64,000 nucleotides of DNA, taken from sequence record MH383160.1. The stretch is one strand, 5' to 3'. The notes under the pieces are model-generated. The model was not told where the DNA came from, did not search any database, and saw only the letters and a list, made by a program, of their open reading frames with translations. Shown here one piece after another: positions 19,747-34,759 of the stretch. Every line of letters begins with the position of its first letter. The stretch's first letter is position 1. A program made the translations under genes and the position numbers.

Positions 19747-19771
19747 GTGTAGTTCTCCTTATATTCCTTCT

Positions 19772-19800: not shown

Positions 19801-19848
19801 GGGTTTTCTTTATGGGGTAAATATGATATAATGAATAAGGAGGGAAAT

Positions 19849-20985
19849 ATGTTACCTTTTGCAAGAATGATGAATTATGGGAACGTAGCACCAGATAAAC
19901 TAAAAATACGTGATATTGTTGCAGGTGCTAATTCATTATTACTAATAACAGAGGATAATGAATTATGGGTGCGTGGTAATAATGCGTATGGCAAATTAGG
20001 TATAGGAACTGATACTATAGTGAATGTAACCGAGTGGACTAAAGTTAGAGATGATGTTAAGTTTGCTTGTGCTAGTAATTTAGTATGCGTTGTATTAACT
20101 GTAGATAATAAAATTTTATACTGTGGTGATGAATGGTTTGAATCTGGTGGTTCGACAAGTTCTAAAGTTGTTACATGGAAAGATGTTACGACACAATTTA
20201 GTGCAGTGAATCTAAGCACAGTTCGTGAAATGAAAATAACTTATTATTGTGTAGGATTACTTACAAATGATAATAGATTATATGCTAAAGGATATGATAA
20301 TAACCAATCATTTGGTGGTTCAACAAGCAAAGTTAATGCTGTATTAGTTGCGTCAAATGTTTCAAAATTCTACACTTCTCTATCTGGTACTATATATTCT
20401 AGTACTACTGGTGGTTACTATCGCTGTGGTATAAGCAATACTGGAGCATTGGGTACTAGCACAAATTTAACTTCTTATAATTTGTACTCTGCTCCCGAAT
20501 TTGCATCCGAATGTGCAGTTGGTATGTCAACATTAAACTCTGGTATATTATATTATGATACTAATGGTATCACTAGATATGTTATAGCAGGTCAAAATAG
20601 AAATTATCAACTAGGTAATTCTTCTTCAAATACCACAAACGTATATTCGTATACAGAATTAACCGGATATAGAGGCAGGTTTAGGGATTTGTGGAGTGAT
20701 ATGAATAACTCTGTTCTTTCTTTTGCTATAAGCACAGATGGCAATACTTTATATTATGCTGGTACTAACAATACACTATCTTCTGGTGATCCTGGTGTTG
20801 AATATTCATCTGCATTCAAAGAAGTACCACACGGGTTTAATGATATAACAAAGGCGGCATCGTTAGCATATCTATCTATAGTGCAAGATTCAACGGGATG
20901 GTATTATTCTGGAAATGCAACTACGTTATATGGTTTGCCATCGAGTGGTGAATTTATACCATTACCATTACCAACATTAATTTAA
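19849..20985 (+). CDS. Array gene 1: RCC1/BLIP-II-like beta-propeller with MLPFARMMNYGN tag
   Basis: GxNxxGxLG repeats (RGNNAYGKLGIG, GQNRNYQLGN); start trimmed to MLPF after the GGAGG RBS. Confidence 0.85.
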   Translation: MLPFARMMNYGNVAPDKLKIRDIVAGANSLLLITEDNELWVRGNNAYGKLGIGTDTIVNVTEWTKVRDDVKFACASNLVCVVLTVDNKILYCGDEWFESGGSTSSKVVTWKDVTTQFSAVNLSTVREMKITYYCVGLLTNDNRLYAKGYDNNQSFGGSTSKVNAVLVASNVSKFYTSLSGTIYSSTTGGYYRCGISNTGALGTSTNLTSYNLYSAPEFASECAVGMSTLNSGILYYDTNGITRYVIAGQNRNYQLGNSSSNTTNVYSYTELTGYRGRFRDLWSDMNNSVLSFAISTDGNTLYYAGTNNTLSSGDPGVEYSSAFKEVPHGFNDITKAASLAYLSIVQDSTGWYYSGNATTLYGLPSSGEFIPLPLPTLI

Positions 20986-21057
20986 ATATAGGCCAGTACT
21001 TGATACTGGCTTTCTTTTTTTTGTATTAAATATAGTATAATGAATAAGGAGGGATTT

Positions 21058-22167
21058 ATGTTACCTTTTGGAAGAATGGTTAAGTACGGAAATATTGTAC
21101 CTGGTCCTAAAAATATAATTAAAGTTGGTGCTTCTACACAAGGTCAATTCTTATTGACTGATTCACATGATTTATATTACATAGGTAGAAATCAAGGTGG
21201 TGAATCTGGAAATGGTAATACCAACACGGTATCTTCATGGATATTAGTAAGTGCAGATGTTTCTAATTTTTTCGTGGGTGATCGTACACTTGTTATTATT
21301 AAAAATGATAATACTATATGGACATCAGGTCAAACGTACTGGTTCTCATCTTCTACAACTACTTCTTACAGTACTGTATTAGTTGAAAGGACTAGTTGGT
21401 TTACCACGGCTATACCAGTAAGTGAGATTGCTAATATTGTATGTACAAATGGTTTAATATTTGTACTTAGCACTAATTCAGTACTCTATGGTGCAGGAGA
21501 TAATGGATATCGTGGTTCTTTGGGTATTGGTTCATCATCAATTTATACATTAACTCAATGTGCTACGAACGTTCGTAAAGTAATGACAAATGCGAATGAT
21601 AGTATGTATCTTACATTAGATAATAAGCTATATAGTTCTGGATGGAATAGTAGTGGGCAGCATGGTACGGGGAACCAAACACAAATTAATACTTGGGGAT
21701 TACGTAGTTCTGGTGTAATCGATGCAGCAATTGGTGGTAATGCATTAAATTACTATAATGGTACATCATATTTCGTATGTGGTCAAACTCCAAACTTTCT
21801 TAGTTCAGGTACGACTACATTCCGTGCAGTTCCTGTAAGTACTTTGCCTAATAGTTCTCCGTTGTTTATGACGAATTCACCTGCATTAAATACTGCTACA
21901 CAAATGGTAATTACTAGTACATATCAGAAGGGTGTTGGGGCGAACCGTGGTTTGGGATTAAACAATTCTCAAACTGGTGCTATATATAGTGCTACCAATT
22001 TACAATTACCCGTTGAAGTTAGTGAGATTAGGGATGTTCTTTTTAGTGATGGTTTGACATCGATATTAACCAAAAATGGAGATGTGTATAGTACTGGATC
22101 GTATTACGCCATTCCAGGTGCAATCGAGGATGTTGCAGTCTTTACTAAAATTGATTTACCAAAATAA
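21058..22167 (+). CDS. Array gene 2: RCC1-like propeller with MLPFGRMVKYGN tag
   Basis: GRNQGGESGNG and GWNSSGQHGTG repeats. Confidence 0.85.
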   Translation: MLPFGRMVKYGNIVPGPKNIIKVGASTQGQFLLTDSHDLYYIGRNQGGESGNGNTNTVSSWILVSADVSNFFVGDRTLVIIKNDNTIWTSGQTYWFSSSTTTSYSTVLVERTSWFTTAIPVSEIANIVCTNGLIFVLSTNSVLYGAGDNGYRGSLGIGSSSIYTLTQCATNVRKVMTNANDSMYLTLDNKLYSSGWNSSGQHGTGNQTQINTWGLRSSGVIDAAIGGNALNYYNGTSYFVCGQTPNFLSSGTTTFRAVPVSTLPNSSPLFMTNSPALNTATQMVITSTYQKGVGANRGLGLNNSQTGAIYSATNLQLPVEVSEIRDVLFSDGLTSILTKNGDVYSTGSYYAIPGAIEDVAVFTKIDLPK

Positions 22168-22237
22168 CATAATGCCAGTACTTGATACTGGCTTTTATTT
22201 TTTGATTAAATATAGTATAATGAATAAAGGAGGAATT

Positions 22238-23425
22238 ATGTTACCTTTTGCAAGAATGGTTAAGTACGGGAATAAAGTCATTCCATATGTTCCCAATTTT
22301 ACTAAATTAGTCACCCCAGCAGTTGGTTATTCATTTACATGCACAATGCTGCTGGATGTAAATGGATCAGTGTGGGCTATGGGTCTTCAGAATGGTGGAA
22401 TTTTTGGGTTAGGGAATACTACACAGGTTACTGAATGGACAAAAATATATAGCAATGTTAAAGATTTTTGGTGCAGTACAGGGAATGGGTTTTGTCTAAT
22501 ACGAACAAATGATGATAGATTCTTTTATAGTGGTTTAGATAAATGGCTAGGTAATAATACAACAAATACTGTAACAACATTCACTGAATGTACGAGTTAT
22601 TTTACACAATTTGGTATTTCAAAAATCAAAGAGATATATGTAGGTCTTGATTATGCTTTGATTTTAGGTACTGATAATAGTTTATATTTGTTAGGTGATA
22701 ATAAAAATTCAAAGTTTGGTTTAAACACTGCATCATATTTTAATAAATTTACATTTTTAGTCGATAATGTTAAAAAATTCTGTTCATCCATCACACCCTC
22801 TAACTGGATTATTAAACTAGATAATACAATATGGCGTACTGGGACAACATCTCATGGAACGTTGGGAAATGGAGTTCAAAACACATATATATTTCCTTGG
22901 GTTCAATATAAGGGCACACCTGTTACCGAAGCTATAGACGTTTTTTGTAGTGCGAGTTATATTGGTATTATAACTAAAGGTACACCAGAATCATGTCCTA
23001 TGTATACAATGGGCTATCAAGCTGATGGTCAGTTGGGTAATAATACTACAGCAGGGGGTTATAAATTAACGCCAACGTTATCGAAAACCGTTCCAGATGA
23101 TAGTGAATTCATTCGAATTGAAAACATCTCATCCCGTGGCCTGGTATATTATAGCTCTGGTAAAATTTATAGTACTGGTTATAATAACAATGGTCAATTG
23201 GCAAATAACAGTACAATTAATTCTGGTTCATTTGTTGAAGCAATTTTACCTGATGGTGTTAATTTTAAGAAAAGTGAATCACTTGTAGCTGGGAACGATG
23301 CAACGTTGTATATGTACATTAATAATAAATTATACTACGCGGGGAAATCCCCTGATAATATTTCAGCAAGTAGTTCATCTGTCATGAAAGAGTTCCCACT
23401 TCCAACAATCAATGCCAGTACTTGA
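22238..23425 (+). CDS. Array gene 3: RCC1-like propeller
   Basis: GYQADGQLGN and GYNNNGQLAN repeats; the stop codon lies inside the next cassette hairpin. Confidence 0.85.
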   Translation: MLPFARMVKYGNKVIPYVPNFTKLVTPAVGYSFTCTMLLDVNGSVWAMGLQNGGIFGLGNTTQVTEWTKIYSNVKDFWCSTGNGFCLIRTNDDRFFYSGLDKWLGNNTTNTVTTFTECTSYFTQFGISKIKEIYVGLDYALILGTDNSLYLLGDNKNSKFGLNTASYFNKFTFLVDNVKKFCSSITPSNWIIKLDNTIWRTGTTSHGTLGNGVQNTYIFPWVQYKGTPVTEAIDVFCSASYIGIITKGTPESCPMYTMGYQADGQLGNNTTAGGYKLTPTLSKTVPDDSEFIRIENISSRGLVYYSSGKIYSTGYNNNGQLANNSTINSGSFVEAILPDGVNFKKSESLVAGNDATLYMYINNKLYYAGKSPDNISASSSSVMKEFPLPTINAST

Positions 23426-23477
23426 TACTGGTATTCTTATTTGTATTAAATATAGTATAATGAATAAAGGAGGAATT

Positions 23478-24665
23478 ATGTTACCTTTTGCAAGAATGAT
23501 GAATTATGGGAATATTGTGCCTGTACCACTACAAATTAAGAAAATAATACCAACTGATACTGATGTTGTTGTACTTTATACTGATGGTCAACTATACGCA
23601 CGAGGAAATAATGCTTTTGGGAAGTTTGGAAGAGGCAACAACACTGCATTAAGAACATGGACATTAATTAGAGAAAACGTTAACGATTTCTGGATCACAC
23701 AAGGAACTTTGTTAGTTCAAGATAATGACTTAAATTATTACTATTGTGGATATGGTGATCATATTGGTTTACCAAGTAGTACTACTACGTTTTTAAGTTA
23801 TAACCAATATATTGAAAATTTGTTCACGCAAAGTTCAAGTACTTCAATTAAACAGATGTATGCAGGTACTACGTGGTTTACTTTCTTAATGGATAATAAT
23901 ACAATATGGAGTACTGGTTGGAGTGGGGGTAAACAATTCGCTGATGGTACGGGTAGTACTCAACAAATAACAGATGGATCATTTGTAAAAGCTGTCACGC
24001 CTGATGTTGATATTGCACAAATACAGTCAACAAATAACTGTGTAATGTTTTTTGATACACAAAATAATTTATATATTGGTGGTGGTACGTCAGGTATAAG
24101 TACTAGTACTACATGGACTTCATATAATGAATATACTTTATATAAACCAAGTACAACATACACAAAAACGTTACAATACACTGGATGCTCAAGTGGTGCA
24201 GTCAGTGCTTTGGTTGAGAATCCAAGTACTGGTGCACGTCAGTTTCTAGTTGGTGGTTTAGCGAATAATGGTGCATGGGGCAACAATACCACAACCAGTT
24301 CAGCACTTGCTGTATTAGGGAGCAATAGTACGACATTACCACCCGGTACTTTGTATTCAATTCATACTGGATACCCAACACAATCTAGTATACTAGTTAC
24401 GAGTACTGGTGTATATGCAACTGGTTTAAATGCGAGTAGTTATGCTGGCTCTTTGGGTGTAGGTTCTAATGTTACTATTGGTAAATTTACTGCATGTCCA
24501 ATGCCTACACAAATAACATATTCTATGTATGATAAAATAAAAATATATAGAGGTTCATATCGTACATTTCTAACTGATATGAAAAATATATATTCAACCG
24601 GAACTTATGATGATGGTGGTCCTAGTACAACTAGATATGTACTAGATACACCCCGTCAATTATAA
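23478..24665 (+). CDS. Array gene 4: RCC1-like propeller
   Basis: RGNNAFGKFGRG repeat; MLPFARMMNYGN tag. Confidence 0.85.
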   Translation: MLPFARMMNYGNIVPVPLQIKKIIPTDTDVVVLYTDGQLYARGNNAFGKFGRGNNTALRTWTLIRENVNDFWITQGTLLVQDNDLNYYYCGYGDHIGLPSSTTTFLSYNQYIENLFTQSSSTSIKQMYAGTTWFTFLMDNNTIWSTGWSGGKQFADGTGSTQQITDGSFVKAVTPDVDIAQIQSTNNCVMFFDTQNNLYIGGGTSGISTSTTWTSYNEYTLYKPSTTYTKTLQYTGCSSGAVSALVENPSTGARQFLVGGLANNGAWGNNTTTSSALAVLGSNSTTLPPGTLYSIHTGYPTQSSILVTSTGVYATGLNASSYAGSLGVGSNVTIGKFTACPMPTQITYSMYDKIKIYRGSYRTFLTDMKNIYSTGTYDDGGPSTTRYVLDTPRQL

Positions 24666-24736
24666 TATAATAGCCAGTACTCAGTACTGGCTTTCTTATT
24701 TGTATTAAATATAGTATAATGAATAAAGGAGGAAGT

Positions 24737-25474
24737 ATGTTACCTTTTGGAAGAATGGTAAAGTACGGGAATAAAATTGAATATAAGCCAGATGGTGAAC
24801 AATTAATCACGACAATAGGAACAACACAATTTACAGTTCCTGCTGGCGTTACCGAAATATCAGTATGTGTTATTTCGCCGGGTGGTCAACGTGGTGCTGG
24901 TGGCGGCTTATCGTGGCGTAATAATATTCCGGTTACTAGTGGTGAGTACTTAAGTGTTTCTCTTACACATCCCAACACTACTACACCAGTTGAAAACGGT
25001 TTATATCGTGGAACTGAAAAACTATGTGTTAGCTTCACTGGTGAATATAGGGTTGGTGGACTAGGTGGGAAAGCTGCTAACGCTATTAATGATGGTGGTG
25101 GTAATGGGGGCAACGCTGGTGTAAGTGGTGGTGCAGTCATTGGTGGTGGTGCTGGTGGCTACACTGGTAAAGGTGGTAACGGAGATGCAATCACTGGTGA
25201 AAATGGTGCTGGCGGCGGCGGTGGTGGTGGTGCATTCTATAATACCTCGTTCATTGGTACGGGTGGTGGTACTGGTATCATTGTTCAAGGTGCTAATGGT
25301 ATTGGCGGTAGATACGATGGTTCATATAATGGTGGTGCTGGTAGTGGTGGTGCTGGTAAGATGTATGGTGGTGGTGGTAGTATATGGGATAATTTTTCTT
25401 ATACGGCTGCTGGTGGTGGTGCTGTGCGAATAATATGGGGACGTGGGAGATATTATCCTAACAATTCAGTCTAA
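24737..25474 (+). CDS. Array gene 5: glycine-rich (polyglycine, adhesin-like) protein with the same MLPFGRMVKYGN tag
   Basis: Many GGxGG/GGGGGG runs, ending GGGAVRIIWGRGRYYP; no RCC1 repeats. Confidence 0.8.
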   Translation: MLPFGRMVKYGNKIEYKPDGEQLITTIGTTQFTVPAGVTEISVCVISPGGQRGAGGGLSWRNNIPVTSGEYLSVSLTHPNTTTPVENGLYRGTEKLCVSFTGEYRVGGLGGKAANAINDGGGNGGNAGVSGGAVIGGGAGGYTGKGGNGDAITGENGAGGGGGGGAFYNTSFIGTGGGTGIIVQGANGIGGRYDGSYNGGAGSGGAGKMYGGGGSIWDNFSYTAAGGGAVRIIWGRGRYYPNNSV

Positions 25475-25546
25475 AATATAGGCCAGTACTTGATACTGGC
25501 TTTCTTATTTGTATTAAATATAGTATAATGAATAAGGAGGGGAATT

Positions 25547-26689
25547 ATGTTACCTTTTGCAAGAATGGTTAAGTACGGGAATATAGCACCAGTTCCAGTA
25601 GTTCCTACAATAAAAGATTTTAAGATTGGCTTTTCACATGAAGTGTTATTGGACAGTGCAGGTGATGCATGGGGTATTGGATACAATACAGATGGGCAGT
25701 TAGGCTTTTTGGATGCAAATACCAATTCACTAGGTGTGTGGTCTAAGATATATACTGATGTTCGATTAATTGGAGTTACTGCTAGATATACAGTGGTAGT
25801 TACTAATAATAATAGAATCCTTTACGCAGGAAATAACTTAATTTCTAGTACTACTACTCTTGGGTGGACCGATATAACTGCCAGTATGGGTCCGGTTGCG
25901 GTGGATAGCATCGATGCATTATATTGCACAGATGGTATGATGCATATTAAAACTTCAGATGGTTCTTTATATGCATATGGTCGTAACATGAACGCAAACA
26001 GTGGTGTTACTGGTGGTGTTATTAGTGTTGCAACTAAGGTTAATTTGCCTTCTGCTGTAAATGACATGCGATATACGTTTAGTTATGGTTCAGTACTATG
26101 TCGATTGGATACGACTTCTATATACGCATGGGGACGAAACACAAATGGTGAATTAGGCCAGGGTAATACAACAGCTATCGTTACCCCAAAACTATTGTCT
26201 GGTGCTTCTATTGCAATGGGTACTTCGTATAATGCTACTGCAATTGTTTCTGGTTCTGCATCGTTAGTTACGTGTGGTGGTCAGAACAGTGGTCAGTTGG
26301 GTAATGGTATTACTACTGATGGTAATGTTTACGTATATGCTGCTAGAACATACCCAGGCGATCTTAATACTATAAGAAGTCCAGTGGATTGTAGTACAAC
26401 GTACACCTCTGCATTTATGAGTCCAGATGGTATATATTACACTGGTGCTAACCGAAGCATGTTTGGTGGTATTAGTGGTGCTGCTACCGTTGGTGTATAT
26501 ACTAAATGTAGTGATTTACCAATAACATATTCTAATATAATTCAGTGGGGTAGTGGTACTATTGGTGGTGCTATATGTAGTAGTACAGAGTTATACCAAT
26601 GTGGCATCGGTCGATACATTGCTGGCGATGGTGCGAGCACAACCAGGTATGGATTTAGGAAGACACCATTACCTTGGGATGTTTATTGA
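25547..26689 (+). CDS. Array gene 6: RCC1-like propeller
   Basis: GYNTDGQLG, GRNTNGELGQG and GQNSGQLGNG repeats. Confidence 0.9.
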   Translation: MLPFARMVKYGNIAPVPVVPTIKDFKIGFSHEVLLDSAGDAWGIGYNTDGQLGFLDANTNSLGVWSKIYTDVRLIGVTARYTVVVTNNNRILYAGNNLISSTTTLGWTDITASMGPVAVDSIDALYCTDGMMHIKTSDGSLYAYGRNMNANSGVTGGVISVATKVNLPSAVNDMRYTFSYGSVLCRLDTTSIYAWGRNTNGELGQGNTTAIVTPKLLSGASIAMGTSYNATAIVSGSASLVTCGGQNSGQLGNGITTDGNVYVYAARTYPGDLNTIRSPVDCSTTYTSAFMSPDGIYYTGANRSMFGGISGAATVGVYTKCSDLPITYSNIIQWGSGTIGGAICSSTELYQCGIGRYIAGDGASTTRYGFRKTPLPWDVY

Positions 26690-26760
26690 AATTATGCCAG
26701 TACTTTGTACTGGCTTTTCTTTTTGTATTAAATATAGTATAATGAATAAAGGAGGGAAGT

Positions 26761-27936
26761 ATGTTACCTTTTGCAAGAATGGTTAAGTACGGGAATAGAG
26801 TTCCAGCACCTTCAGGTGTTATGAAGATAAGTACATCTCATGTACATATGGGTATGTTATTCGATACAGGCAATTTATATCTACGTGGATTAGGTACACA
26901 GTACAGGTTAGGAAATGATAGTACTGCGACACTACAAAATGGGTGGGTCAAGTGTCCATATAAAGTTTCTGATGTTTGGTGCTTCTTCGCAGCGACAATT
27001 ATACTTACGACTGATGGAGAATTTTACTTAGCTGGTCAAATGGGTTATGTCGGTGTCTCTGCATCACCAGTTCCTGGATGGACTAATATCACATCTTTAT
27101 TGTCTACAATACCAGCACTTACTACAGTGGTAGATATAGCTTCTACTGAAACTACCGAATCAAATGGTTCGTTATTGATTTTGTTAAGTAATGGGGACTT
27201 ATATGGTATTGGGCGTAATACAGGAGGTGTATTGGGTGTTACTGGTATACAAACAACGCCGATTCAGATTGCTACTGGAGTTAGTATGATTGCGGGAACA
27301 CCGTCAGGTGAGGCTTTCCATTATGTCAAAAATAATCAATACTACAGATGTGGGAATAACGCAAGTTACAACTTAGGGTCAAGTTCTTCTAAACTTTCTA
27401 CATTTACGGTAAGTACTGATATATCGGGAACAGTTATTGGTATTTCATGTACTACATTAACGACTTCAGTACTTACATCTAATAATGGTAATATTAGAGT
27501 ATATAATGCTGGCAGAAACACTGATTATTGTTTAGGAATAGGGTATGGAGACACTAAGACTATAATGAGTCCATTTAGTATGACTCCAGCAATTGTTGGT
27601 ATCACACCAGATGCTAATTCAATGAATAACCACTGTTTGAATTATTCTTTAATGGCAATGACACAGAATGGTAAGCTTTATACATGTGGTAGTGGTGTTG
27701 CTCTTGGTTGGCCTGTTTCTATTGAATCAGAAAGATCTTATTATCACCAGGTACAATATGAGGATATGGATATTGCACCAGATGTTAATGCATTTTCAGC
27801 ACAAGGGGGTTCCGGTGTGTTATACGCATTAGTGGGGACAAATGAGGTGTACTGGTGTGGTAGTGGTTCTATGTTCCAGGAACAGAGTGCAGGTACACGA
27901 CAAGTTAAAATGAAGAAAATGATTTTACCGGAATAG
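26761..27936 (+). CDS. Array gene 7: RCC1-like propeller
   Basis: N-terminal blade closely similar to gene 10 (HMGMLFDTGNLYLRG vs HVGLLYSTGNMYMRG). Confidence 0.85.
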   Translation: MLPFARMVKYGNRVPAPSGVMKISTSHVHMGMLFDTGNLYLRGLGTQYRLGNDSTATLQNGWVKCPYKVSDVWCFFAATIILTTDGEFYLAGQMGYVGVSASPVPGWTNITSLLSTIPALTTVVDIASTETTESNGSLLILLSNGDLYGIGRNTGGVLGVTGIQTTPIQIATGVSMIAGTPSGEAFHYVKNNQYYRCGNNASYNLGSSSSKLSTFTVSTDISGTVIGISCTTLTTSVLTSNNGNIRVYNAGRNTDYCLGIGYGDTKTIMSPFSMTPAIVGITPDANSMNNHCLNYSLMAMTQNGKLYTCGSGVALGWPVSIESERSYYHQVQYEDMDIAPDVNAFSAQGGSGVLYALVGTNEVYWCGSGSMFQEQSAGTRQVKMKKMILPE

Positions 27937-27945
27937 GAGGAAAAT

Positions 27946-29133
27946 ATGTTACCTTTTGCAAGACTGGTCAAGTACGGGAATAAGATACCACCACCCGCTG
28001 GTATCCGCAAGATTAATACTTATGGATTAGGGCATTTATTTTTAACTACCGATGGTAAGTTATTTGCATATGGTTCAAATAATGAGTATCGTTTTGGTAC
28101 ACCAACCACTTCGATTGTTGGTGGAGTGCCTAGCTTAGTTCTTATAAATGTAGCTATGATATACTGTCATCCAGCATATACTATATGTCTAATGAATGAT
28201 GGAAGATATATGGCGGCGGGGAATTTAAGTCAATTTGGATTAGGTTCACAAACAAGTTTCGTTGATGTGAGTTCATTTTTCAGCACATTAGGAACTATTA
28301 CAAAGATTGCAATTACACGCCGTGAAACACCAGGAACTAGTACAATATACGCATTGAATAGTACTGGAATATTATATGCTATGGGTTCAAATAACCGTGG
28401 ACAGTTTGGTAATAATACCCTAACTGGGAAGATAGGTGAATTTGTACAAATCAACACTAACTGTAAAGATGTGGTAACCTGTTCTTATGAAACAGTTGTT
28501 GTGTTAAAGAACGATAACACAGCTTGGTTTTGTGGTAATTATGGATTAACATCTGGATCATCTGATATTAAGGTATTCACCAATATAGGTGATACTGATA
28601 TCCTTTCAATCAATTCGGATGGTTCAGGCGGCTCATTGTTATACACCAAGAGTACTGGATTATATGTTCGTGGTTTGCTCACTTCATTGTATGGATTGAC
28701 GTATACTTCAGGTTCCCAGGGAACTAACAGATTAGCAGTTCTTCCCTTTACATACGATAGTGCTAATTTTAGATACTGGACTGATCCAGAGGGTCAAGGA
28801 CCATCATGTTGGATTCAGGATTTGAGTACAGGTACACGTTATGCAACTGGCTCTACTAATAGTAGCAATGGCAGATTAGGATTTAGTGTTCCGACAGCTT
28901 CTGGTAATAGTTTCAGAGAGCAGGTTATAAACCTACCAGAAGGTACATCAACAATGACAGTACTGTCAGTTGGTATGGGAAATAATTATTCTGCATTAAT
29001 TAGCACCGATGGTATAGTATATGGTTCAGGTGCATTCAACGGGTATGGTGCATATCCAGGAACAGAAGTGGTGAACTACCCTGACTCCAATCCTACACTA
29101 TTTCAATATGAGCCAATTAAATTGGGTATATGA
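27946..29133 (+). CDS. Array gene 8: RCC1-like propeller (RBS only, no own cassette)
   Basis: GSNNRGQFGN repeat; starts 10 nt after the gene 7 stop. Confidence 0.85.
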   Translation: MLPFARLVKYGNKIPPPAGIRKINTYGLGHLFLTTDGKLFAYGSNNEYRFGTPTTSIVGGVPSLVLINVAMIYCHPAYTICLMNDGRYMAAGNLSQFGLGSQTSFVDVSSFFSTLGTITKIAITRRETPGTSTIYALNSTGILYAMGSNNRGQFGNNTLTGKIGEFVQINTNCKDVVTCSYETVVVLKNDNTAWFCGNYGLTSGSSDIKVFTNIGDTDILSINSDGSGGSLLYTKSTGLYVRGLLTSLYGLTYTSGSQGTNRLAVLPFTYDSANFRYWTDPEGQGPSCWIQDLSTGTRYATGSTNSSNGRLGFSVPTASGNSFREQVINLPEGTSTMTVLSVGMGNNYSALISTDGIVYGSGAFNGYGAYPGTEVVNYPDSNPTLFQYEPIKLGI

Positions 29134-29214
29134 AGTATGTATATCAAACAGCCAGTACTTGATACTGGCTTTTCTTTTTGATTAAATATAGTATAATGAA
29201 TAAAGGAGGGATTT

Positions 29215-30394
29215 ATGTTACCTTTTGCAAGAATGGTTAAGTACGGGAATATAGCACCTATATATGAATCTAGTGTAATTAAAATGCAAGCACCATCGGC
29301 TTTTACCAACAACACATTGATGATTCTGTATAAGAACGGTGATTTGTGGGGTATTGGCGGTAACAATGCTGGTATATTCGGTCTTGGAAATACAACGACA
29401 CAGACCAAATGGGTTCGCTTAATGCAAAATGTGAAAAATTTTTGGTGCACAAGGAATGCTTCATATAGCTTAGTTCAGACCAATGATAATAAATTTTATT
29501 ATGCAGGTTGGAACCTTTGGACTGGTACATCTAGTGCAGTTCAAAGTACTACATTTGTTGATTGTACGTCTTATTTTTCAGGTTTTAATGTGGATAATAT
29601 CAAGGAGATATATCCAAATGTTCGTAATATGTTTTTACTAACAAATGATAGTGTTCTTTACGCAATAGGTGATAATTCAACCTATGAGTTGGGTAGTAGT
29701 TCATCTACACTTACATCATTTACACAGGTTAATATTAATGTTAAAAAGGTTAGTTCATTTTTCAATAGTCCAACTTGGATAATTAAAAATGATAATTCAG
29801 CATGGAGATGTGGTAAAACTAGTACTGGTACATTGTTAACTGGTTCTGCTACTGATACTTTGACGAGTTGGACAAAGTATAGTTTTCCTACAGGCCAGTA
29901 CCCCGTTGATATAATTTCATATAACAATATGTTGGGTATAGTTCTTAATGTAGATAATACTTATCCGCTATATGGTGTAGGGTCACAAAATTCACGGACA
30001 ATTAGGAAATGGTGTTCTATCTAATACTAATAAGATATCTTTAACGCCACAAAGTACTTATTTACAATTAACTAATGTTTCCGATTTTGAATTTATACAA
30101 ACATATTCACAAAATCCTAGGGGATTATTATATAGAAATGGAAGTCGTATTTTTGGAACAGGGTATAATAATTATGGACAGCTTGGTAACAATTCATCTA
30201 ATAATGCTTCAATTTTTGTCCAAGCACAATTTCCAAATTCTGTAGTTTATGATCCGTCAACATCGTTGGTTGCTGCGAATGACAATGCATTATTTGCATA
30301 TGTGAATGGGAAATTATACTACACTGGTATGTCTCCAGTGGGGACAGTTGTTGGTACATGGACTTTAACTGAATACCAATTGCCACAAATTTAA
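29215..30394 (+). pseudogene. Array gene 9: RCC1-like propeller split by a +1 frameshift at CGG 29995-29997 (pseudogene, recoded gene or sequence error)
   Basis: Frame 1 stops at 30024. Skipping C29995 gives GSQNS-GQLGNG...GYNNYGQLGN...LPQI* (stop 30392-30394), colinear with the C-terminus of gene 3. Confidence 0.85.
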
Positions 30395-30404
30395 GGAGAA
30401 AATT

Positions 30405-31574
30405 ATGTTACCTTTTGGAAGAATGTTAAAGTACGGAAATATTAAACCAACTCTTCCTGAAATAAAGAAATTGGATGGTAGTCAATTACATGTCGGATTA
30501 CTTTATAGTACAGGGAATATGTACATGCGTGGTTCTGGTTCGAACTATAAATTAGGTACAGGGGATGCTAGTGATGTATTCGGTGGTTGGGTACATGTAC
30601 CCTATGAAGTTGATGATTTTTGGGCGTGTGTATCCGGTACATTAATAAAGACTGTTGATAATAAATTATATTGTGCAGGTCTATACATGGGTGGATATTT
30701 TGGGGCTAGTGGTTCATATGTTAACTGGACTGAAGTAACTTCATTATTTGTAGGTATTGACGTGTCGCAAATAAAGAATATAGAATTTACGTCAGCGGGT
30801 ACGTCAGGTAGTACACTAATATTGATGTTAGATGGTCGTTTATATGGGTTCGGTATGAACAGTAGATCCGAGTTAGGTGTTAATAACAAAGTTGTATCTC
30901 CCATTCTTATAGATACTGGGGTAAGTGCAATAGGAGCACATAAGTTAGGGGGTTCATCGTTCCATTATATAAAAGGCGGTAAGTACTACAGATGTGGAAC
31001 ATCGGTTGGTAGTAATATTGGAAGTTCTTCTTTGACTACTTTTACTGTATTGAGTATTCCTGATAACGTTATATCTATGCAAATATTATATGACAACGTA
31101 CAGTTATTATGTGTAGGAAGTTCTGGATATAGTATCTATATGGCTGGTTCGAATGATTATGGTGGAAGAGGTGTTGGCGGTTCTACGGTTTATACTACAT
31201 TCAGGAAAATAGATCTTACAGGATTTGGTGTTGTTCCCAGTGAAATACTATTTGAAAATGCCGGAAATGGTTATGTTAATATATCAACTGATAGTACTGG
31301 AGTATATACATGTGGTGGTGGTGCGGGTGTTAACGGTTTAGGTAGACCAACTAATGTAATACCAAGTTCACAGTTGGGGGTAGTTCAGTTCAGTACTGGA
31401 GTAGAACAATCAAATATAAGTCGTGTGTATTCACAGAGTTCGAGTTCTGTTATATATTGTATAGTCAATAATGAATTGTACTGGGCTGGTAGTAATTCAT
31501 ATTTTACTGATCAAACCACATCCACTGGTACACAATTTTCATTTATTAAGATGAAGGACATGCCTTCTGCTTAG
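30405..31574 (+). CDS. Array gene 10: RCC1-like propeller (RBS only)
   Basis: GMNSRSELG and GSNDYGGRG repeats; MLPFGRMLKYGN tag. Confidence 0.85.
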   Translation: MLPFGRMLKYGNIKPTLPEIKKLDGSQLHVGLLYSTGNMYMRGSGSNYKLGTGDASDVFGGWVHVPYEVDDFWACVSGTLIKTVDNKLYCAGLYMGGYFGASGSYVNWTEVTSLFVGIDVSQIKNIEFTSAGTSGSTLILMLDGRLYGFGMNSRSELGVNNKVVSPILIDTGVSAIGAHKLGGSSFHYIKGGKYYRCGTSVGSNIGSSSLTTFTVLSIPDNVISMQILYDNVQLLCVGSSGYSIYMAGSNDYGGRGVGGSTVYTTFRKIDLTGFGVVPSEILFENAGNGYVNISTDSTGVYTCGGGAGVNGLGRPTNVIPSSQLGVVQFSTGVEQSNISRVYSQSSSSVIYCIVNNELYWAGSNSYFTDQTTSTGTQFSFIKMKDMPSA

Positions 31575-31645
31575 ATTTTATGCCAGTACTTAACACTGGC
31601 TTTTCTTTTTGATTAAATATAGTATAATGAATAAAGGAGGATTTT

Positions 31646-32851
31646 ATGTTACCTTTTCCAAGGATGATAAAATACGCAAATAAAATGAAAGTTCCTGAAG
31701 TGAAAGAAATCTTTATTTACAATGGTTATAGTGCGTCAGTTATTCCAGCAACAGCACTCTTACTATTATATAAAAATGGAGACTTAATGGGTATAGGTGG
31801 AACTAGTTCACAAAACTATGGATTCGGAAATGGTGTACCTAATGCGAAAGTAAAAGAGTGGACTTTAATATACCAAAATGTAAAACGTTTTAGAACAGCC
31901 CAAGGTTCTTTTAATTTAATCCAAACCGAAGATAATAAATTTTATTACAGTGGCGTAGGTAGAGCTATTGGTACAGGATTAAGTACTGTCAGTACTTATA
32001 CTGATTGTACTTCATATTTTACATCAGTATTCAATGCAACACAATTGTCCCAAATTAAGGACATTCAAATTGTAGGGGAGGGTATTTTTGTTTTACTTCA
32101 AAATGGTACGCTATATGGAATGGGGGCCAATACACAGGGATATTTTGGTAATAACACAACCACAAGATTATCAACATTTACTTCAATTAATACGAATGTG
32201 GATAGTGTAAAAACAGGTTCAAGTGCAGTGATTGTACAGAAAATTGATAAAACACTTTGGGTCACTGGTCAAAACACATGGGGTTCACTTGGTATAAGCA
32301 ATGGTGAAACTAACATTAGAGTATGGACACAAATGGGTGCATTAGCCAACAATACTGTTATACATTATGAACTTGGTGGGAGTGCATCATGGGTTGTATC
32401 TAAACACAACACGAATAATACATATACAGTTCGTGCAAGTGGGATTCAATCGGAAGGTAACTTGGGTAATGGTTCAGCCGCTTCATCAGGGACAGTATTA
32501 TCTACAATCTCCACTCTACCAATATCCGATAATATGGAAATGAAATCAAATTCATTAACATATGGTGGGCTTACGGTTAAAACTACCAATTCACTTTATA
32601 TGTGTGGTATAAACACATATGGTAGGCTCGGTCGCGGTAATACAACATCAAGTACTACATTTGTAGTTCCAGTTGATGCACCTAAAGTTGGCAGCATCGA
32701 GTTATTCTGTCCAAGTGAATGTACAAATGTGTATATGGATAATCAAGGGGATGTGTATTTGAGTGGCTATATCCCACAAGCGACAGGTACAACAGTTTCT
32801 GATTATTACACTAAATTTCAATTATATAAAATACCCAGTCGTGGTATATAA
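31646..32851 (+). CDS. Array gene 11: RCC1-like propeller
   Basis: GQNTWGSLG and GINTYGRLGRG repeats; MLPFPRMIKYAN tag. Confidence 0.9.
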   Translation: MLPFPRMIKYANKMKVPEVKEIFIYNGYSASVIPATALLLLYKNGDLMGIGGTSSQNYGFGNGVPNAKVKEWTLIYQNVKRFRTAQGSFNLIQTEDNKFYYSGVGRAIGTGLSTVSTYTDCTSYFTSVFNATQLSQIKDIQIVGEGIFVLLQNGTLYGMGANTQGYFGNNTTTRLSTFTSINTNVDSVKTGSSAVIVQKIDKTLWVTGQNTWGSLGISNGETNIRVWTQMGALANNTVIHYELGGSASWVVSKHNTNNTYTVRASGIQSEGNLGNGSAASSGTVLSTISTLPISDNMEMKSNSLTYGGLTVKTTNSLYMCGINTYGRLGRGNTTSSTTFVVPVDAPKVGSIELFCPSECTNVYMDNQGDVYLSGYIPQATGTTVSDYYTKFQLYKIPSRGI

Positions 32852-32922
32852 AATAAAGCCAGTATTTTGTACTGGCATTTTTTTGTCCTAAATATAATAA
32901 CGATTTACATTTGGAGGATACA

Positions 32923-34075
32923 ATGCTACCCTTTGGAAGAATTATCACATCATCAAAAAAGAACATACAACCTTCTGTTACAAAAATAGCTTCATCTGAT
33001 ACAACAGTTTTTGCCCTTATGTCAGATGGTACGTTGTACAGTAGAGGCTCTCAAGAGTTTGGGCAAATGGGTATAGGTAATATTATAACACAAACCAAAT
33101 GGGTTTTGTGCAATACAAACGTAGAAGATCTATGGGTTCGGGTATGAGTCAACATTAATTAAAAAGAAAGATAATACGATGTGGTATGCTGGAAATGGTG
33201 CATCATTCGGTTTATCAACTGATAAGTCAACAACGTGGGCTTCTGCAAAGATAGTGTTTGATAGAATAACAGCACTTGGAAAAACAATAAAACAAATTGC
33301 AGTTAGTGCAGGTGCATTAAGCGTATTATGTACAGACAACACGATATGGAATACGGGTTATGGTAGTTATGGACAACTGGGAAATGGTAGAAGTACCGAT
33401 TCACTTTCATCATTTGTACAAGGAACAGTACCTACTGGAGTAACACCATCCAAAATACTGGCAAATTTTCTTATGCAAGGATTTATTGGAACCGATGGGA
33501 GATTGTATTATACTGGTGCAATATCAGGCGTAGGTACAACCGACATGACGTTATATTCAAAGTACACGTTATGTTCTCAAATAACTAATACCTATACGGT
33601 GAAAGATTATACAACAAACTCAAGTTACTTCGCTTTTGCTATAGCAAGTAATAATAGTACTAATAAATTATTTGCATATCATGGTGGTGGACAATACTTT
33701 GGTCAGTTAGCAAATGGTTCTACATCACAAACATATATTTCGTTAAGACAAACAACACAAGCACCAGGTGATATAATAAGAAGCAGTGTGGGTTATTCAT
33801 ATTTTTCTAATCATATTATAACTTCATTAGGTGTTTACGCAACTGGTTATAACACAGGCGATAACGCAGGTCAATTGGGTATAGGTACACAAACAGATGT
33901 GTCGGCCTATACCAAATGTGTACTACCAATAGAGATGAATATGAATAACGTATATGTTACAGCAACTTTATACAGAACTTACTTAACCGATGGTATACAA
34001 ATTTACAGTACTGGACAAAATATTACAGATGGCGGTATTGCCAGTACTGTATTTGTCAAAGATTCACCATTTTAG
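32923..34075 (+). pseudogene. Array gene 12: RCC1-like propeller split by a +1 frameshift at CGG 33139-33141
   Basis: Frame 1 stops at 33147. Skipping C33139 gives LWV-GYESTLIKKKDNTMWYAG, continuing into ORF 33179-34075. Confidence 0.85.
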
Positions 34076-34718
34076 GAATATTGTACAAAGTGTATGCGGT
34101 TATTTTAGAACTCTTTTTAAATTCATCGTAAAGATAATTCAAAATTTTGGAACATTCAATATACTTTTCAATATCTTTATGGATTAATGAGTACTGAAAC
34201 ATTAAATCAGATGATATATTGTAGGTACTACCTTTTAAACTGTTTAAAATATCACAGATTTCAGGGTTTACGGGTACTTCGTCAAAATTATCATCTAAAA
34301 CATTTATTTCAAAATCAAAGCTATCTTTGTTTTTGATTAATTTGATAATAGAATCACCATAAACATTATATTGTTTTAATGGATTTACTACAATGTTAAA
34401 AAGATTGGATGTATTACAATCAATATCCATAAAGTATGTATTATCATTATACTTAATATTGAAACATCCGTACTCAATAAAATCACCCGGAGTTATTGAT
34501 GAGTTTCTTCTCGTTTCAACATAAGAAGCTTTAATTTTGTTTTTATTTAAAAGAGTAATAAATTTCTTAGACTGTTTAGCACCAGCTAAGTAAGTATTAT
34601 AACTTGGTCTTTTAAAAATTATAGGACTAGTCTTCTCACCAGAGAAATATTTTTTTATAAATTTACGCTGTTTAACGAAATAATTTTTATAAAACAAACC
34701 TAATTTTGTTTTCATCAT
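34056..34718 (-). CDS. Hypothetical protein (220 aa), convergent with the array
   Basis: ORF with GGAG RBS; CCAGTACT-tgat-AGTACTGG hairpin at 34733-34752 just upstream. Confidence 0.75.
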   Translation of the reverse strand: MMKTKLGLFYKNYFVKQRKFIKKYFSGEKTSPIIFKRPSYNTYLAGAKQSKKFITLLNKNKIKASYVETRRNSSITPGDFIEYGCFNIKYNDNTYFMDIDCNTSNLFNIVVNPLKQYNVYGDSIIKLIKNKDSFDFEINVLDDNFDEVPVNPEICDILNSLKGSTYNISSDLMFQYSLIHKDIEKYIECSKILNYLYDEFKKSSKITAYTLYNIPKMVNL

Positions 34719-34759
34719 AACTCCTTATACATCCAGTACTTGATAGTACTGGATTTTTA

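What the first reader, a model, noticed from the sequence alone, without database searches (positions are those of the whole stretch)
20992..32960. Near-identical ~100-bp terminator/late-promoter/RBS/tag cassette makes each array gene an autonomous, swappable unit
Seen: nine copies of hairpin, T-tract, TAAATA and GGAGG (eight near-identical, one degenerate), running on into conserved ATGTTACCTTTTG.AAGAATG-type coding sequence. DNA identity, including synonymous positions, drops right after codon ~12. Genes 8 and 10 lack the cassette and appear co-transcribed with genes 7 and 9. Inference: the conserved block provides recombinase-independent crossover points for duplication, deletion and exchange of heads (an integron-like outcome without attC or integrase) and insulates expression of each gene.
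Basis: partly seen in the sequence, partly recalled or inferred. Interest (0 to 1): 0.75.

Follow-up and report, generated by a model that had tools for sequence, protein, structure and literature searches.

The report
Shuffled tagged-gene array in jumbo phage
A giant E. coli phage carries a row of twelve genes for virion-associated binding-type proteins. Most are preceded by the same ~100-base stop/start/tag block, and comparison with 17 relatives shows that whole genes have been gained, lost and swapped at these blocks.

Summary
The window is Escherichia phage UB (Asteriusvirus, ~350 kb). Positions 19849-34075 hold 12 tandem + strand genes: 11 RCC1-like beta-propellers and one glycine-rich protein. 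All start with MLPF[AG]RM[VM][KN]YGN.

Nine junctions carry hairpin + T-run + TAAATATA + GGAGG + tag (eight near-identical, one degenerate). Genes 8 and 10 have only stop-SD-tag. Synonymous sites in codons 2-12 are far more uniform than codon usage predicts.

- All 18 arrays compared differ (5-16 units; 45 unit types), although the flanks are mostly 82-99% identical.
- Mosaic boundaries fall in the cassettes (29 of 43 distinct ends in 8.5% of the array, p=2e-21).
- 20 unit pairs occur in both orders.
- Orthologous bodies carry the cassette version of their own lineage.

The tag is a separate module. AlphaFold2 predicts it disordered on two unrelated folds. In a distant relative it also heads Kelch, lectin-like and Gly-rich proteins. 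Published mass spectrometry found eight array proteins in phAPEC6 virions.

The closest known systems are the PeSL cassettes of T4-type phages and the capsid-targeting tag of T4 internal proteins. I rate it a new variant of a known kind. Promoter, terminator and tag functions remain inferred.

The parts
19817..19884 (+). Array leader: GTAAATATGATATAATGAATAAGGAGGG, then ATG 19849 and the 12-codon tag of gene 1. No hairpin.
19849..20985 (+). Gene 1 (unit type U), RCC1-like, 378 aa.
20992..21093 (+). Cassette 1: hairpin 20992-21010, T-run, TAAATATA at 21027, SD, ATG 21058, tag codons 1-12.
21058..22167 (+). Gene 2 (type B), RCC1-like, 369 aa.
22174..22273 (+). Cassette 2 (ATG 22238).
22238..23425 (+). 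Gene 3 (type H), RCC1-like, 395 aa.
23414..23513 (+). Cassette 3 (ATG 23478).
23478..24665 (+). Gene 4 (type A), RCC1-like, 395 aa.
24673..24772 (+). Cassette 4 (ATG 24737).
24737..25474 (+). Gene 5 (type E), 245 aa. Glycine-rich, not RCC1. Homologous to Pfam Gly_rich_2 proteins and carries the same tag.
25482..25582 (+). Cassette 5 (ATG 25547).
25547..26689 (+). Gene 6 (type D), 380 aa. AlphaFold2 model is a seven-bladed RCC1-like propeller with a disordered tag.
26696..26796 (+). Cassette 6 (ATG 26761).
26761..27936 (+). Gene 7 (type L), RCC1-like, 391 aa. No terminator hairpin after it.
27934..27981 (+). Short junction: the stop TAG overlaps the SD (TAGGAGG), then ATG 27946 and the tag. No hairpin, no TAAATA.
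27946..29133 (+). Gene 8 (type a), RCC1-like, 395 aa.
29151..29250 (+). Cassette 7 (ATG 29215).
29215..30394 (+). Gene 9 (type M), RCC1-like. The ORF ends at 30024 (269 aa) after a frame change; the +1 frame stays open to TAA 30392-30394.
30392..30440 (+). Short junction: TAA, GGAG, ATG 30405, tag. No hairpin, no TAAATA.
30405..31574 (+). Gene 10 (type F), RCC1-like, 389 aa.
31582..31681 (+). Cassette 8 (ATG 31646). The tag is slightly diverged: MLPFPRMIKYAN.
31646..32851 (+). Gene 11 (type T), RCC1-like, 401 aa.
32858..32957 (+). Cassette 9, degenerate: hairpin GCCAGTATTTTGTACTGGC, CTAAATATAATAAC, GGAGG, ATG 32922, tag MLPFGRIITSSK.
32922..34075 (+). Gene 12 (type I), RCC1-like. Split by a frame change into 32922-33146 and 33179-34075.
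34733..34752 (+). Related hairpin CCAGTACTTGATAGTACTGG plus T-run beyond the array. Possibly a relic of a former last unit.

Best explanation
What it is. The region is a hyperplastic array of genes for virion-associated proteins, probably expressed late, in an Asteriusvirus jumbo phage (Escherichia phage UB). Each unit has a variable binding-type body. Most bodies are seven-bladed RCC1-like propellers; one in UB is glycine-rich. In a distant relative the bodies also include a Kelch propeller and a concanavalin-A-like lectin domain.

The repeated block. Each body sits behind a shared composite block with four parts:
1. An intrinsic-terminator hairpin with a T-run, which would end the upstream transcript.
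2. A T4-late-type promoter core, TAAATATA.
3. A strong Shine-Dalgarno sequence.
4. A 12-codon N-terminal tag (M-[LI]-P-F-x-R-x-x-x-Y-G-N). It is a flexible extension outside the folded domain. It most likely docks or targets every array protein to one common site in the virion.

How it works. The block is about 85-90% identical over roughly 100 bp at every junction, and the SD+tag part is present at all junctions. General homologous recombination, between co-infecting relatives or between junctions of one genome, can therefore cross over there. That deletes, inserts, replaces or moves whole bodies. The result always has a correct start, tag and, usually, its own promoter and terminator. This is the PeSL model of T4-type phages, extended to a late promoter and into the coding sequence.

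What is shown: the anatomy; the shuffling among relatives; the position of mosaic boundaries in the block; the lineage-specific cassette versions on orthologous bodies; the modularity and predicted disorder of the tag.

What is taken from the literature: virion association, from published mass spectrometry.

What is inferred: promoter class, termination, the recombination pathway, and what the tag binds.
For: Anatomy and chance.

Identity of the window: 100% match to phage UB, MH383160.1.

Array variation:
- The flanks are 82-99% identical in most relatives, while the array spans 6.4 to 20.7 kb.
- 206 units fall into 45 types, and all 18 arrays are different.
- 36 adjacencies recur in at least two genomes, and the same unit has alternative neighbours. 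For example H follows B, A or D; A follows C, H, D or Y.
- 20 of 252 co-occurring type pairs occur in both orders.

Position of boundaries:
- 98 of 120 alignment ends (29 of 43 distinct ends) lie in cassette zones that cover 8.5% of the array (p=2e-21). They pile up at the hairpin and at the end of the tag.
- No shared segment of at least 60 bp at 88% identity was found between bodies of different types.
- Columns left of the hairpin follow the upstream unit. Columns from the loop onward follow the downstream unit, with residual mixing.
- Cassette divergence is 3% when both neighbours are shared, 9% for the same downstream unit only, 13% for the same upstream unit only, and 15% when both differ.
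- Short junctions follow the upstream unit, while downstream units such as B, F, Q, N and P occur with either junction kind.

Concerted evolution of the cassette:
- Upstream 75 nt are 85% identical within EJP2 and 88% within UB, but 71% between the two, even for orthologous bodies (type N: body 98%, upstream 63%, tag 81%). Identity starts at about codon 16.

Synonymous-site uniformity in the tag.

Tag as a separate module:
- M1, P3, F4, Y10 and N12 are invariant among 34 paralogues that share about 22-25% identity.
- AlphaFold2 gives pLDDT 53 and 46 for residues 1-10, against 92 overall, on two unrelated folds.
- All 14 genes of a distant 361-kb contig carry the tag, including Kelch, Laminin_G_3 and Gly_rich_2 proteins.
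- Only 2 of 120 homologues of the glycine-rich body carry it.

Late expression and virion association:
- Eight array proteins were detected in phAPEC6 virions (PMC7247149 Table 1, mapped).
- The RCC1-like gp1 of GAP32 is structural. An ATAAATA late motif and a gp55-like sigma factor are described for Rak2-like phages (PMC5259590).
- TAAATA-N14-24-GGAG-N4-9-ATG occurs 12 times in the window against 0.43 expected. Ten are in the array and one is at the only gene matching a virion structural protein family, which has a perfect TATAAATA.
- TAAATA is invariant in 119 cassettes and in four other lineages.
Against: - No transcript, terminator or recombination data exist for this phage. The promoter class rests on a 6-8 nt motif in AT-rich DNA, and a perfect TATAAT lies 3 nt downstream of TAAATATA.
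- Within one genome the cassettes are hardly more alike than between genomes of the UB group (14.1% versus 15.2% divergence). Ongoing intragenomic conversion is therefore weak on that timescale.
- No recent duplicate units were found.
- Conservation of the block could be maintained wholly by selection on expression and on the tag peptide, with recombination a by-product.
- Some array orders come from short-read assemblies. A 100-bp repeat can be mis-joined, and the phAPEC6 record shows such a problem at its origin.
- Where in the virion the proteins sit, and what the tag binds, is unknown. Mass-spectrometry coverage was low (1-5 peptides each).
Confidence: 0.72

Rival explanations
1. The block is conserved only because each gene needs the same strong late promoter, terminator, ribosome site and functional N-terminal peptide. 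Recombination at it is an unselected side effect, and the array differences arise mostly from differential loss out of a large ancestral array.
For: - The tag is conserved at protein level in distant lineages whose synonymous sites vary (L019, L020, 7t3).
- TAAATA and the SD are conserved across lineages.
- A recognisable backbone order (K B J C A .. D ..) exists in six genomes.
- There is little within-genome homogenisation.
Against: - Loss alone cannot give 20 unit pairs in both orders, or units with several recurrent neighbours.
- Loss alone cannot explain orthologous bodies carrying the cassette version of their own lineage.
- Rare codons (AAG, TAC, GGG) are fixed in the tag against body codon usage. 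This points to shared DNA descent or conversion rather than protein selection alone.
- Whether recombination is 'selected' cannot be decided from sequence.
Confidence: 0.18
2. A dedicated site-specific or nuclease-driven system moves the units, with the hairpin as its recognition site. This would be integron- or homing-like, for example through one of the HNH endonucleases encoded nearby.
For: - The hairpin stem GCCAGTAC/GTACTGGC is invariant in 119 junctions.
- The hairpin is palindromic, containing AGTACT.
- An HNH endonuclease gene lies in the window at 59861-60649.
- The switch from upstream-linked to downstream-linked variation falls at the left arm of the hairpin.
Against: - No integrase-like ORF is present in the window.
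- The fEgEco12 paper reports no transposase or lysogeny genes (PMC13070987).
- Exchange also happens at 32 junctions that have no hairpin and at the 3' end of the tag.
- Hairpin sequences differ between lineages while the architecture persists.
- A stem plus T-run is what an intrinsic terminator needs (ARNOLD annotations in G17).
Confidence: 0.05
3. Much of the apparent shuffling is an assembly artefact: 100-bp near-identical repeats spaced 1.2 kb apart are mis-joined in short-read assemblies.
For: The phAPEC6 GenBank record starts inside a cassette that lacks its SD. It carries a 2,423-bp two-unit repeat equal to the excess of the record over the published genome length. 73 of 109 adjacencies are seen in one genome only.
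Against: - 36 adjacencies recur in independently sequenced genomes, and the conflicting contexts of B, H, A, D, M, F, C, R and G are each supported by at least two genomes.
- Array length between conserved flanks varies from 6.4 to 20.7 kb, which mis-joining cannot produce.
- The block is shorter than common read lengths and insert sizes.
Confidence: 0.05

Closest known systems
PeSL (promoter-early stem-loop) cassettes of T4-type phages (Arbiol et al. 2010, PMC2839356; Comeau et al. 2014, PMC4122927)
   Same: - A composite terminator stem-loop plus promoter plus SD, about 100 bp, repeated at gene junctions in a hyperplastic region.
- Differences between close relatives are whole-gene insertions, deletions and replacements bounded by the repeats.
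- The moved gene brings its own promoter and terminator.
- No site-specific recombinase is involved.
   Different: - The promoter part here has no -35 element. It matches the T4-late type (TAAATATA) rather than sigma-70 early promoters.
- The genes encode virion-associated proteins of about 40 kDa, not small early ORFans.
- The repeat runs 36 nt into the coding sequence and fixes a shared N-terminal peptide.
- The units form one uninterrupted tandem array of paralogues.
- Mini-circles have not been looked for.
T4 internal proteins with the capsid targeting sequence (CTS) and the polymorphic IP locus of T-even phages (reviewed in PMC3012670, citing Repoila et al. 1994)
   Same: A short N-terminal peptide is the only conserved part of an otherwise highly diverse set of virion-carried proteins encoded at a variable locus. 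The tag is modular and can sit on unrelated folds.
   Different: - T4 IPs are small proteins, packaged inside the head and ejected. Their CTS is removed by the prohead protease at a Glu.
- The UB-type tag has no Glu.
- The bodies here are 25-45 kDa, near-neutral, G/S/T/N-rich binding-type folds.
- Their location in the virion (inside or outside) is unknown.
Integron gene-cassette arrays
   Same: The outcome is the same: a one-directional array of single-gene units that are gained, lost and reordered at a repeated junction element that includes an inverted repeat.
   Different: - There is no IntI integrase and no attC or attI sites.
- Most units carry their own promoter instead of using a common Pc.
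- Exchange maps to a homologous block, including coding sequence, rather than to a folded single-strand site.
Multi-receptor-binding-protein sets with conserved N-terminal anchors in large phages, for example RaK2/K64-1 depolymerases and CBA120 tailspikes (from my own knowledge, not tested here)
   Same: Many variable binding proteins per virion, attached through a conserved N-terminal part, in the same broad group of jumbo phages.
   Different: - Those anchors are folded domains of about 100 residues or more on trimeric beta-helix tailspikes.
- Here the shared part is a 12-residue disordered peptide on monomer-sized propellers.
- A role in adsorption is not shown for the proteins here.

Membership tests
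PeSL cassettes (T4-type phages) | Composite of stem-loop terminator, promoter and SD conserved over about 100 bp at gene junctions | tested here: met
   Nine copies in UB and 147 of 188 junctions in 18 genomes.
PeSL cassettes (T4-type phages) | The promoter is a sigma-70-type early promoter (-35, -10, AT-rich upstream element) | tested here: not met
   No -35 match lies 16-18 nt from the TATAAT, and the cassettes are not among the sigma-70-like sites. The invariant element is TAAATATA, shared with the one gene in the window that matches a virion structural protein family.
PeSL cassettes (T4-type phages) | Lies in a hyperplastic region; indels and replacements between relatives are bounded by the repeats | tested here: met
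PeSL cassettes (T4-type phages) | Excised mini-circles carrying one unit and one chimeric cassette | not testable with these tools
   Needs PCR or long reads on lysate DNA.
Integron | Adjacent intI tyrosine recombinase | tested here: not met
   No ORF of suitable size or family is present in the 64-kb window. The rest of the genome was not scanned here. The fEgEco12 paper reports no transposase or lysogeny genes (PMC13070987).
Integron | attC recombination sites at cassette ends; promoterless cassettes read from a common Pc | tested here: not met
   The repeat is a 19-nt hairpin plus T-run. Exchange also occurs at junctions without a hairpin, and most units have their own promoter-like motif.
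T4-type internal proteins with capsid targeting sequence | A short N-terminal peptide shared by otherwise unrelated virion proteins | tested here: met
   The tag sits on RCC1, Gly-rich, Kelch, Laminin_G_3 and unassigned bodies. Virion association comes from PMC7247149 Table 1, mapped.
T4-type internal proteins with capsid targeting sequence | Prohead-protease cleavage motif (L/I-x-E) at the end of the tag | tested here: inconclusive
   UB-type tags have no Glu. Tags of L020, EJP2 and some metagenomic homologues read MLE or ILE. No N-terminal proteomics are available.
T4-type internal proteins with capsid targeting sequence | Located inside the capsid and ejected with the DNA | not testable with these tools
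   Needs protease or antibody accessibility tests, cryo-EM, or ejection assays.
RCC1-like beta-propeller proteins (Pfam RCC1, RCC1_2, WD40_RLD) | Seven-bladed propeller built of RCC1 repeats | tested here: met
   Pfam hits for 9 of the 10 genes scanned, and PHROG family 4219 for gene 9. AlphaFold2 model with pLDDT 92.5. Best PDB matches are UVR8, RPGR, HERC2 and RCC1, with TM 0.63-0.79.
RCC1-like beta-propeller proteins (Pfam RCC1, RCC1_2, WD40_RLD) | Chromatin or DNA-condensation function, as implied by the database name | not tested
   There is no evidence for it. The proteins have pI 5.2-9.2, about 6% basic residues and 38-49% G/S/T/N. The name is inherited from the eukaryotic founder of the family.

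The most novel reading that the evidence does not exclude
The 12-residue tag is a universal plug that docks any protein carrying it to one site of the jumbo-phage virion, either on the surface or by targeting to the inside. The late-promoter/terminator/tag cassette then lets the phage population hold and reshuffle a combinatorial library of binding modules (45 or more types; propellers, lectin-like and glycine-rich folds). That would be a recombination-driven 'plug-and-display' repertoire, a natural phage-display system, distinct from tail-fibre swapping, DGRs and integrons.
Probability: 0.4. Interest if true: 0.8.

Novelty: new variant of a known kind. Interest (0 to 1): 0.62.

Why it matters
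Scope of the known principle. The finding would extend PeSL-type modular shuffling. That principle is known for small early ORFans of T4-type phages. Here it would apply to genes that carry a late-type promoter motif and whose products are found in virions, in 350-kb jumbo phages. It would also show that the recombination substrate can reach into the coding sequence, so that every swapped body automatically receives a shared N-terminal tag.

Annotation. These genes are named 'chromosome condensation' or 'DNA condensation' proteins in dozens of phage records. This work instead points to a variable set of virion-borne binding modules.

Testable handles:
- A 12-residue peptide that may be sufficient to load foreign proteins onto or into a jumbo-phage particle.
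- An array whose turnover can be followed in laboratory crosses.
- A candidate determinant of host or environment adaptation among otherwise near-identical therapeutic coliphages.

Tried and rejected
- HMM search. A profile search of 1.84 billion proteins with the paralogue alignment was swamped by giant multi-RCC1 proteins (164,148 hits). It said nothing about the distribution of the tag.
- Rfam. No family matched in 19000-35000.
- Sigma-70 scan. 85 sites were found against 83.7 expected, and the cassettes were not among them. An early PeSL-type promoter is therefore not supported.
- Within-genome homogenisation. I expected strong homogenisation of cassettes within a genome. The difference was small (14.1% versus 15.2%). 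Concerted evolution showed only between lineages.
- Chimeric bodies. I looked for them as a sign of recombination inside genes and found none of at least 60 bp at 88% identity. The apparent L/e chimera in UB versus JP4 is a 77%-identical allele pair.
- Hairpin regex. My first hairpin pattern undercounted: 119 of 188 junctions. A generic pattern gives 147. Some 'hairpin-less' junctions carry the EJP2-type cassette.
- phAPEC6 duplication. It looked like a copy-number variant. It is most likely an assembly artefact at the record origin.
- SD-tag RNA pairing. Pairing between the SD and codons 3-4 is weak and is not conserved in L019. I rejected it as the reason for synonymous conservation.
- Whiskers. 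I considered that the proteins form the 'hairy' whiskers of phAPEC6. Phage CBB has whiskers but no RCC1 homologue (PMC5259590), so they are not the whiskers themselves.
- Repoila et al. 1994 could not be read.

Full report
IDENTITY AND SETTING

The window matches Escherichia phage UB (MH383160.1) at 100% identity. UB is a 353-kb member of the genus Asteriusvirus, the 121Q/PBECO4 group of Rak2-like jumbo myoviruses.

The array is the only long + strand block in a region otherwise read on the - strand. GC skew flips accordingly.

The neighbours are early-type genes: many 60-80-aa ORFs, a sigma factor (61737-62702), a protein kinase of the T7 gp0.7 type (45803-46477) and an HNH endonuclease gene (59861-60649). 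One gene matches a virion structural protein family (47600-49147).

THE OBSERVATION

Twelve tandem genes lie between 19849 and 34075.

Eleven start with ATGTTACCTTTTG[CG]AAGAATG or a close variant. None is expected by chance. The twelfth has a degenerate version at 32922.

Nine junctions carry the hairpin GCCAGTAC-loop-GTACTGGC with a T-run. All nine are scored terminator-like: 23 sites against 7.0 +/- 2.9 in shuffles. The same hairpins were annotated as terminators by ARNOLD in phage G17.

Eight of the nine are followed by an identical TTAAATATAGTATAATGAATAA and then by AAGGAGG.

Gene 1 has the promoter/SD/tag part without a hairpin. Genes 8 and 10 have only stop-SD-ATG.

Identity among copies is 0.78-1.00 over the first 40 nt of coding sequence and drops to 0.39 from +40.

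Across one representative of each of 45 unit types, codons 2-12 use a single codon far more often than the bodies' own codon usage predicts. Examples are GGG in 29 of 41 against 11% expected, AAG in 27 of 29 against 28%, and CCT in 43 of 45 against 33%.

WHAT THE GENES ENCODE

Nine of the ten genes scanned hit the Pfam RCC1, RCC1_2 or WD40_RLD families. Gene 9 matches the RCC1-type PHROG family 4219.

An AlphaFold2 model of gene 6, built with 34 paralogues, is confident (pLDDT 92.5, pTM 0.89). It matches seven-bladed RCC1-like propellers (UVR8, RPGR, HERC2, RCC1) with TM 0.63-0.79.

Gene 5 is different. It is a 245-aa glycine-rich protein homologous to Pfam Gly_rich_2 proteins. Its model is also confident (pLDDT 92.1). 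Its only structural leads are weak: a cyanophage fibre and the ALK glycine-rich domain.

The proteins are near-neutral (pI 5.2-9.2) and 38-49% G/S/T/N. That is not the make-up of DNA-condensing proteins, so the database name is inherited from the eukaryotic founder of the family.

Genes 9 and 12 are interrupted by single frame changes. The rest of each gene stays open in another frame. The same breaks occur in every genome that has those unit types.

THE TAG IS A MODULE OF ITS OWN

Among 34 paralogues that share about 22-25% identity, the invariant columns are M1, P3, F4, Y10 and N12 plus four glycines. R6 and G11 are nearly invariant.

In both models, residues 1-10 have pLDDT 53 and 46. No secondary structure appears before about residue 20. 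The most conserved segment therefore lies outside the fold.

A 361-kb metagenomic contig (L019) has a 14-gene array. Every product starts MIPF[AVT][RK]..., including a Kelch propeller, a Laminin_G_3 (concanavalin-A-like) protein, a Gly_rich_2 protein and a 230-aa protein with no family.

Arrays with the tag also occur in a 19.7-kb contig (L020), in Salmonella phage 7t3 and in the divergent Asteriusvirus EJP2.

Of 120 homologues of the glycine-rich body, only two carry the tag. The rest begin differently and align from about residue 20. A tag grafted onto unrelated folds is what a docking or targeting peptide looks like.

VIRION ASSOCIATION AND TIMING

The published structural proteome of phAPEC6 lists gp003, gp005, gp006, gp007, gp009, gp010, gp549 and gp551 (PMC7247149, Table 1).

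Mapping the record shows that all eight are array units: types n, D, L, M, Q, F, C and c. They include the truncated 269-aa M product. Several other units are not annotated in that record and could not have been scored.

The single RCC1-like protein of GAP32 was also found in virions (PMC5259590).

The same paper describes an ATAAATA late motif before structural genes, and a gp55-like sigma factor, in Rak2-like phages.

In this window the arrangement TAAATA-N14-24-GGAG-N4-9-ATG occurs 12 times against 0.43 expected. Ten are in the array. One is before the gene that matches a virion structural protein family, and there it reads TATAAATA, the T4 late consensus.

TAAATATA is invariant in 119 cassettes. 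TAAATA is kept in EJP2, 7t3, L019 and L020, while the neighbouring TATAAT drifts.

No -35 element accompanies the TATAAT, and the sigma-70 scan did not pick the cassettes.

A late promoter is therefore the better reading, but it is an inference.

THE COMPARATIVE TEST

The flanks of the array are 82-99% identical in most relatives. The distance between them ranges from 6.4 kb (ph0011) to 20.7 kb (CMSTMSU).

I cut 18 arrays at their tag start codons into 206 units. Clustered at 85% or higher nucleotide identity, these give 45 types. At a looser threshold they give 36 families.

No two arrays are alike:
- UB reads U B H A E D L a M F T I.
- 121Q reads C c B J A E j D L M Q I.
- PBECO4 reads K B J C A R D H T I.
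- JP4 reads C B H A l E D e a M F T.
- ph0011 reads N d A V b.

On average 44% of units and 11% of adjacencies are shared. Twenty of 252 co-occurring type pairs occur in both orders.

Alternative contexts are each supported by at least two independent genomes. H follows B, A or D. A follows C, H, D or Y. M is followed by F or Q. Differential loss alone cannot explain this.

Where the boundaries lie:
- Of 120 ends of high-identity alignments between UB and the others, 98 lie in cassette zones that make up 8.5% of the array. For distinct ends the figure is 29 of 43 (p=2e-21).
- Most of the remaining ends lie within a few bases of a cassette zone. The ends pile up at the hairpin and at +30 to +49.
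- Bodies of different types share no segment of at least 60 bp at 88% identity. Only their 3' cassette parts match.

Crossover positions within the block:
- In an alignment of 119 hairpin junctions, columns to the left of the hairpin follow the upstream unit. Columns from the loop onwards follow the downstream unit, with residual mixing.
- Cassettes differ by 3% when both neighbours are the same, 9% with only the same downstream unit, 13% with only the same upstream unit, and 15% otherwise.
- Of 188 junctions, 147 have hairpin plus TAAATA, 9 have TAAATA only, and 32 are short.
- Short status is fixed by the upstream unit (K, M, W, X and others). Downstream units such as B, F, Q, N and P occur with either kind of junction. 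Crossovers can therefore use SD+tag alone.

The clearest single case is type N. Its body is 98% identical between EJP2 and the UB group, but its upstream 75 nt are 63% identical and its tag 81%. Identity begins at about codon 16. The downstream N-to-O junction in UE-S1 carries an EJP2-type cassette.

More generally, cassettes are 85-88% alike within a lineage and 71% alike between lineages, whatever the bodies. That is concerted evolution of the block, uncoupled from the genes.

MECHANISM

The best-supported reading is homologous recombination at a repeated block of about 100 bp, or about 45 bp at short junctions.

The block also serves as terminator, late promoter, ribosome site and tag. Every product of a crossover is therefore an in-frame, tagged and normally self-expressed gene.

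A RecA-like recombination protein is listed for phAPEC6 (PMC7247149).

It differs from PeSLs in promoter class, in gene class, in being one tandem array of paralogues, and in reaching into the coding sequence.

Whether the array proteins sit on the surface or inside the head is open.
- For a surface position: the binding-type folds (propellers, lectin-like, fibre-like), the G/S/T/N-rich neutral composition, and the absence of a conserved Glu for protease removal in UB-type tags.
- For an internal position: the CTS analogy and the inner body seen in phAPEC6.
- My estimate is roughly 55% surface, 25% internal and 20% something else.
- They are not the long whiskers themselves, because phage CBB has whiskers but no RCC1 homologue (PMC5259590).

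CAVEATS
- No expression or recombination experiment exists for this group in the papers searched.
- Within the UB group, cassettes of one genome are barely more alike than those of different genomes.
- No recent duplicates were seen.
- Some deposited orders could contain assembly errors. The phAPEC6 record starts inside a cassette and carries a suspicious 2,423-bp repeat.

NOVELTY

The RCC1 multiplicity has been noted before, as 'eleven similar RCC1-like proteins' interpreted as DNA condensation or as tandem duplication (PMC7247149). Single terminators and repeat regions are annotated in some records.

I found no description of the following: the composite cassette, the shared tag, its presence on unrelated folds, or the shuffling.

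I rate the finding a new variant of a known kind (PeSL-type modular shuffling combined with CTS-type tagging), of moderate to high interest.

Noticed in passing
window 29215-30394: Gene 9 (type M) ends at 30024 after a one-base frame change near 29985. The +1 frame then stays open for about 130 codons, to TAA 30392-30394. The same 269-aa ORF occurs in the six fetched genomes that carry this unit (UB among them) and in phAPEC6, where the 30-kDa product was detected in virions. It is either an inherited break that still spreads or a programmed frameshift.
   Followed up: partly
window 32922-34075: Gene 12 (type I) is split by a frame change into a 74-aa tagged N-terminal piece and a 298-aa remainder (33179-34075). 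The break is identical in 7 of 7 genomes with this unit. Unit type R (not in UB) is broken in the same consistent way in 5 of 5 genomes.
   Followed up: partly
window 34733-34752: A cassette-like hairpin (CCAGTACTTGATAGTACTGG plus T-run, + strand) lies beyond the array, between two minus-strand ORFs. In Turkey3, WPEC5, Ecwhy_1 and EC.P1 a further + strand RCC1 gene lies beyond the homologous minus-strand ORF. The hairpin may therefore be the relic of a lost last unit.
   Followed up: no
L023/L024 (phAPEC6, MK817115.1 record origin): The circular record starts inside a cassette whose SD is missing. It also contains a two-unit repeat of 2,423 bp, exactly the excess of the record (352,598) over the published genome length (350,175). 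This is probably an assembly artefact caused by the repeated cassette, not a real duplication.
   Followed up: partly
P0021-P0060 (homologues of window 24737-25474): Most Gly_rich_2 homologues from other phages and bacteria lack the MLPF tag. They share a different N-terminus, M-[LI]-E-[LMT]-L..., ahead of the same body. This may be a second tag of the same kind in other phage groups.
   Followed up: no
window 21041-21060 and every cassette: An in-frame ATG lies 18 nt upstream of each tag start, inside the promoter/SD segment (ATGAATAAAGGAGG...). Mechanical ORF calling therefore gives MNKGGI-MLPF... and, for genes 3 and 4, ORFs that run back across the hairpin. The SD spacing fits the MLPF start.
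   Followed up: no
window 25537-25565 and equivalents: The SD (GAGGG) is predicted to pair weakly with CCUUU of tag codons 3-4, enclosing the start codon in an 11-nt loop. The pairing is weak and is not conserved in the distant array L019.
   Followed up: partly
window 49145-49189 and 50419-50463 (- strand): These are the only two other places in the window with TAAATA-spacer-GGAG-ATG. One precedes the gene matching a virion structural protein family at 47600-49147 and reads TATAAATA, the T4 late consensus. The other precedes a small ORF upstream of an endonuclease-like gene.
   Followed up: partly
L002 (UE-S1), junction N to O: A UB-group genome carries one EJP2-type cassette next to a unit pair (N, O) that is 94-98% identical to EJP2. 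This is a footprint of transfer of a multi-unit block between lineages.
   Followed up: partly
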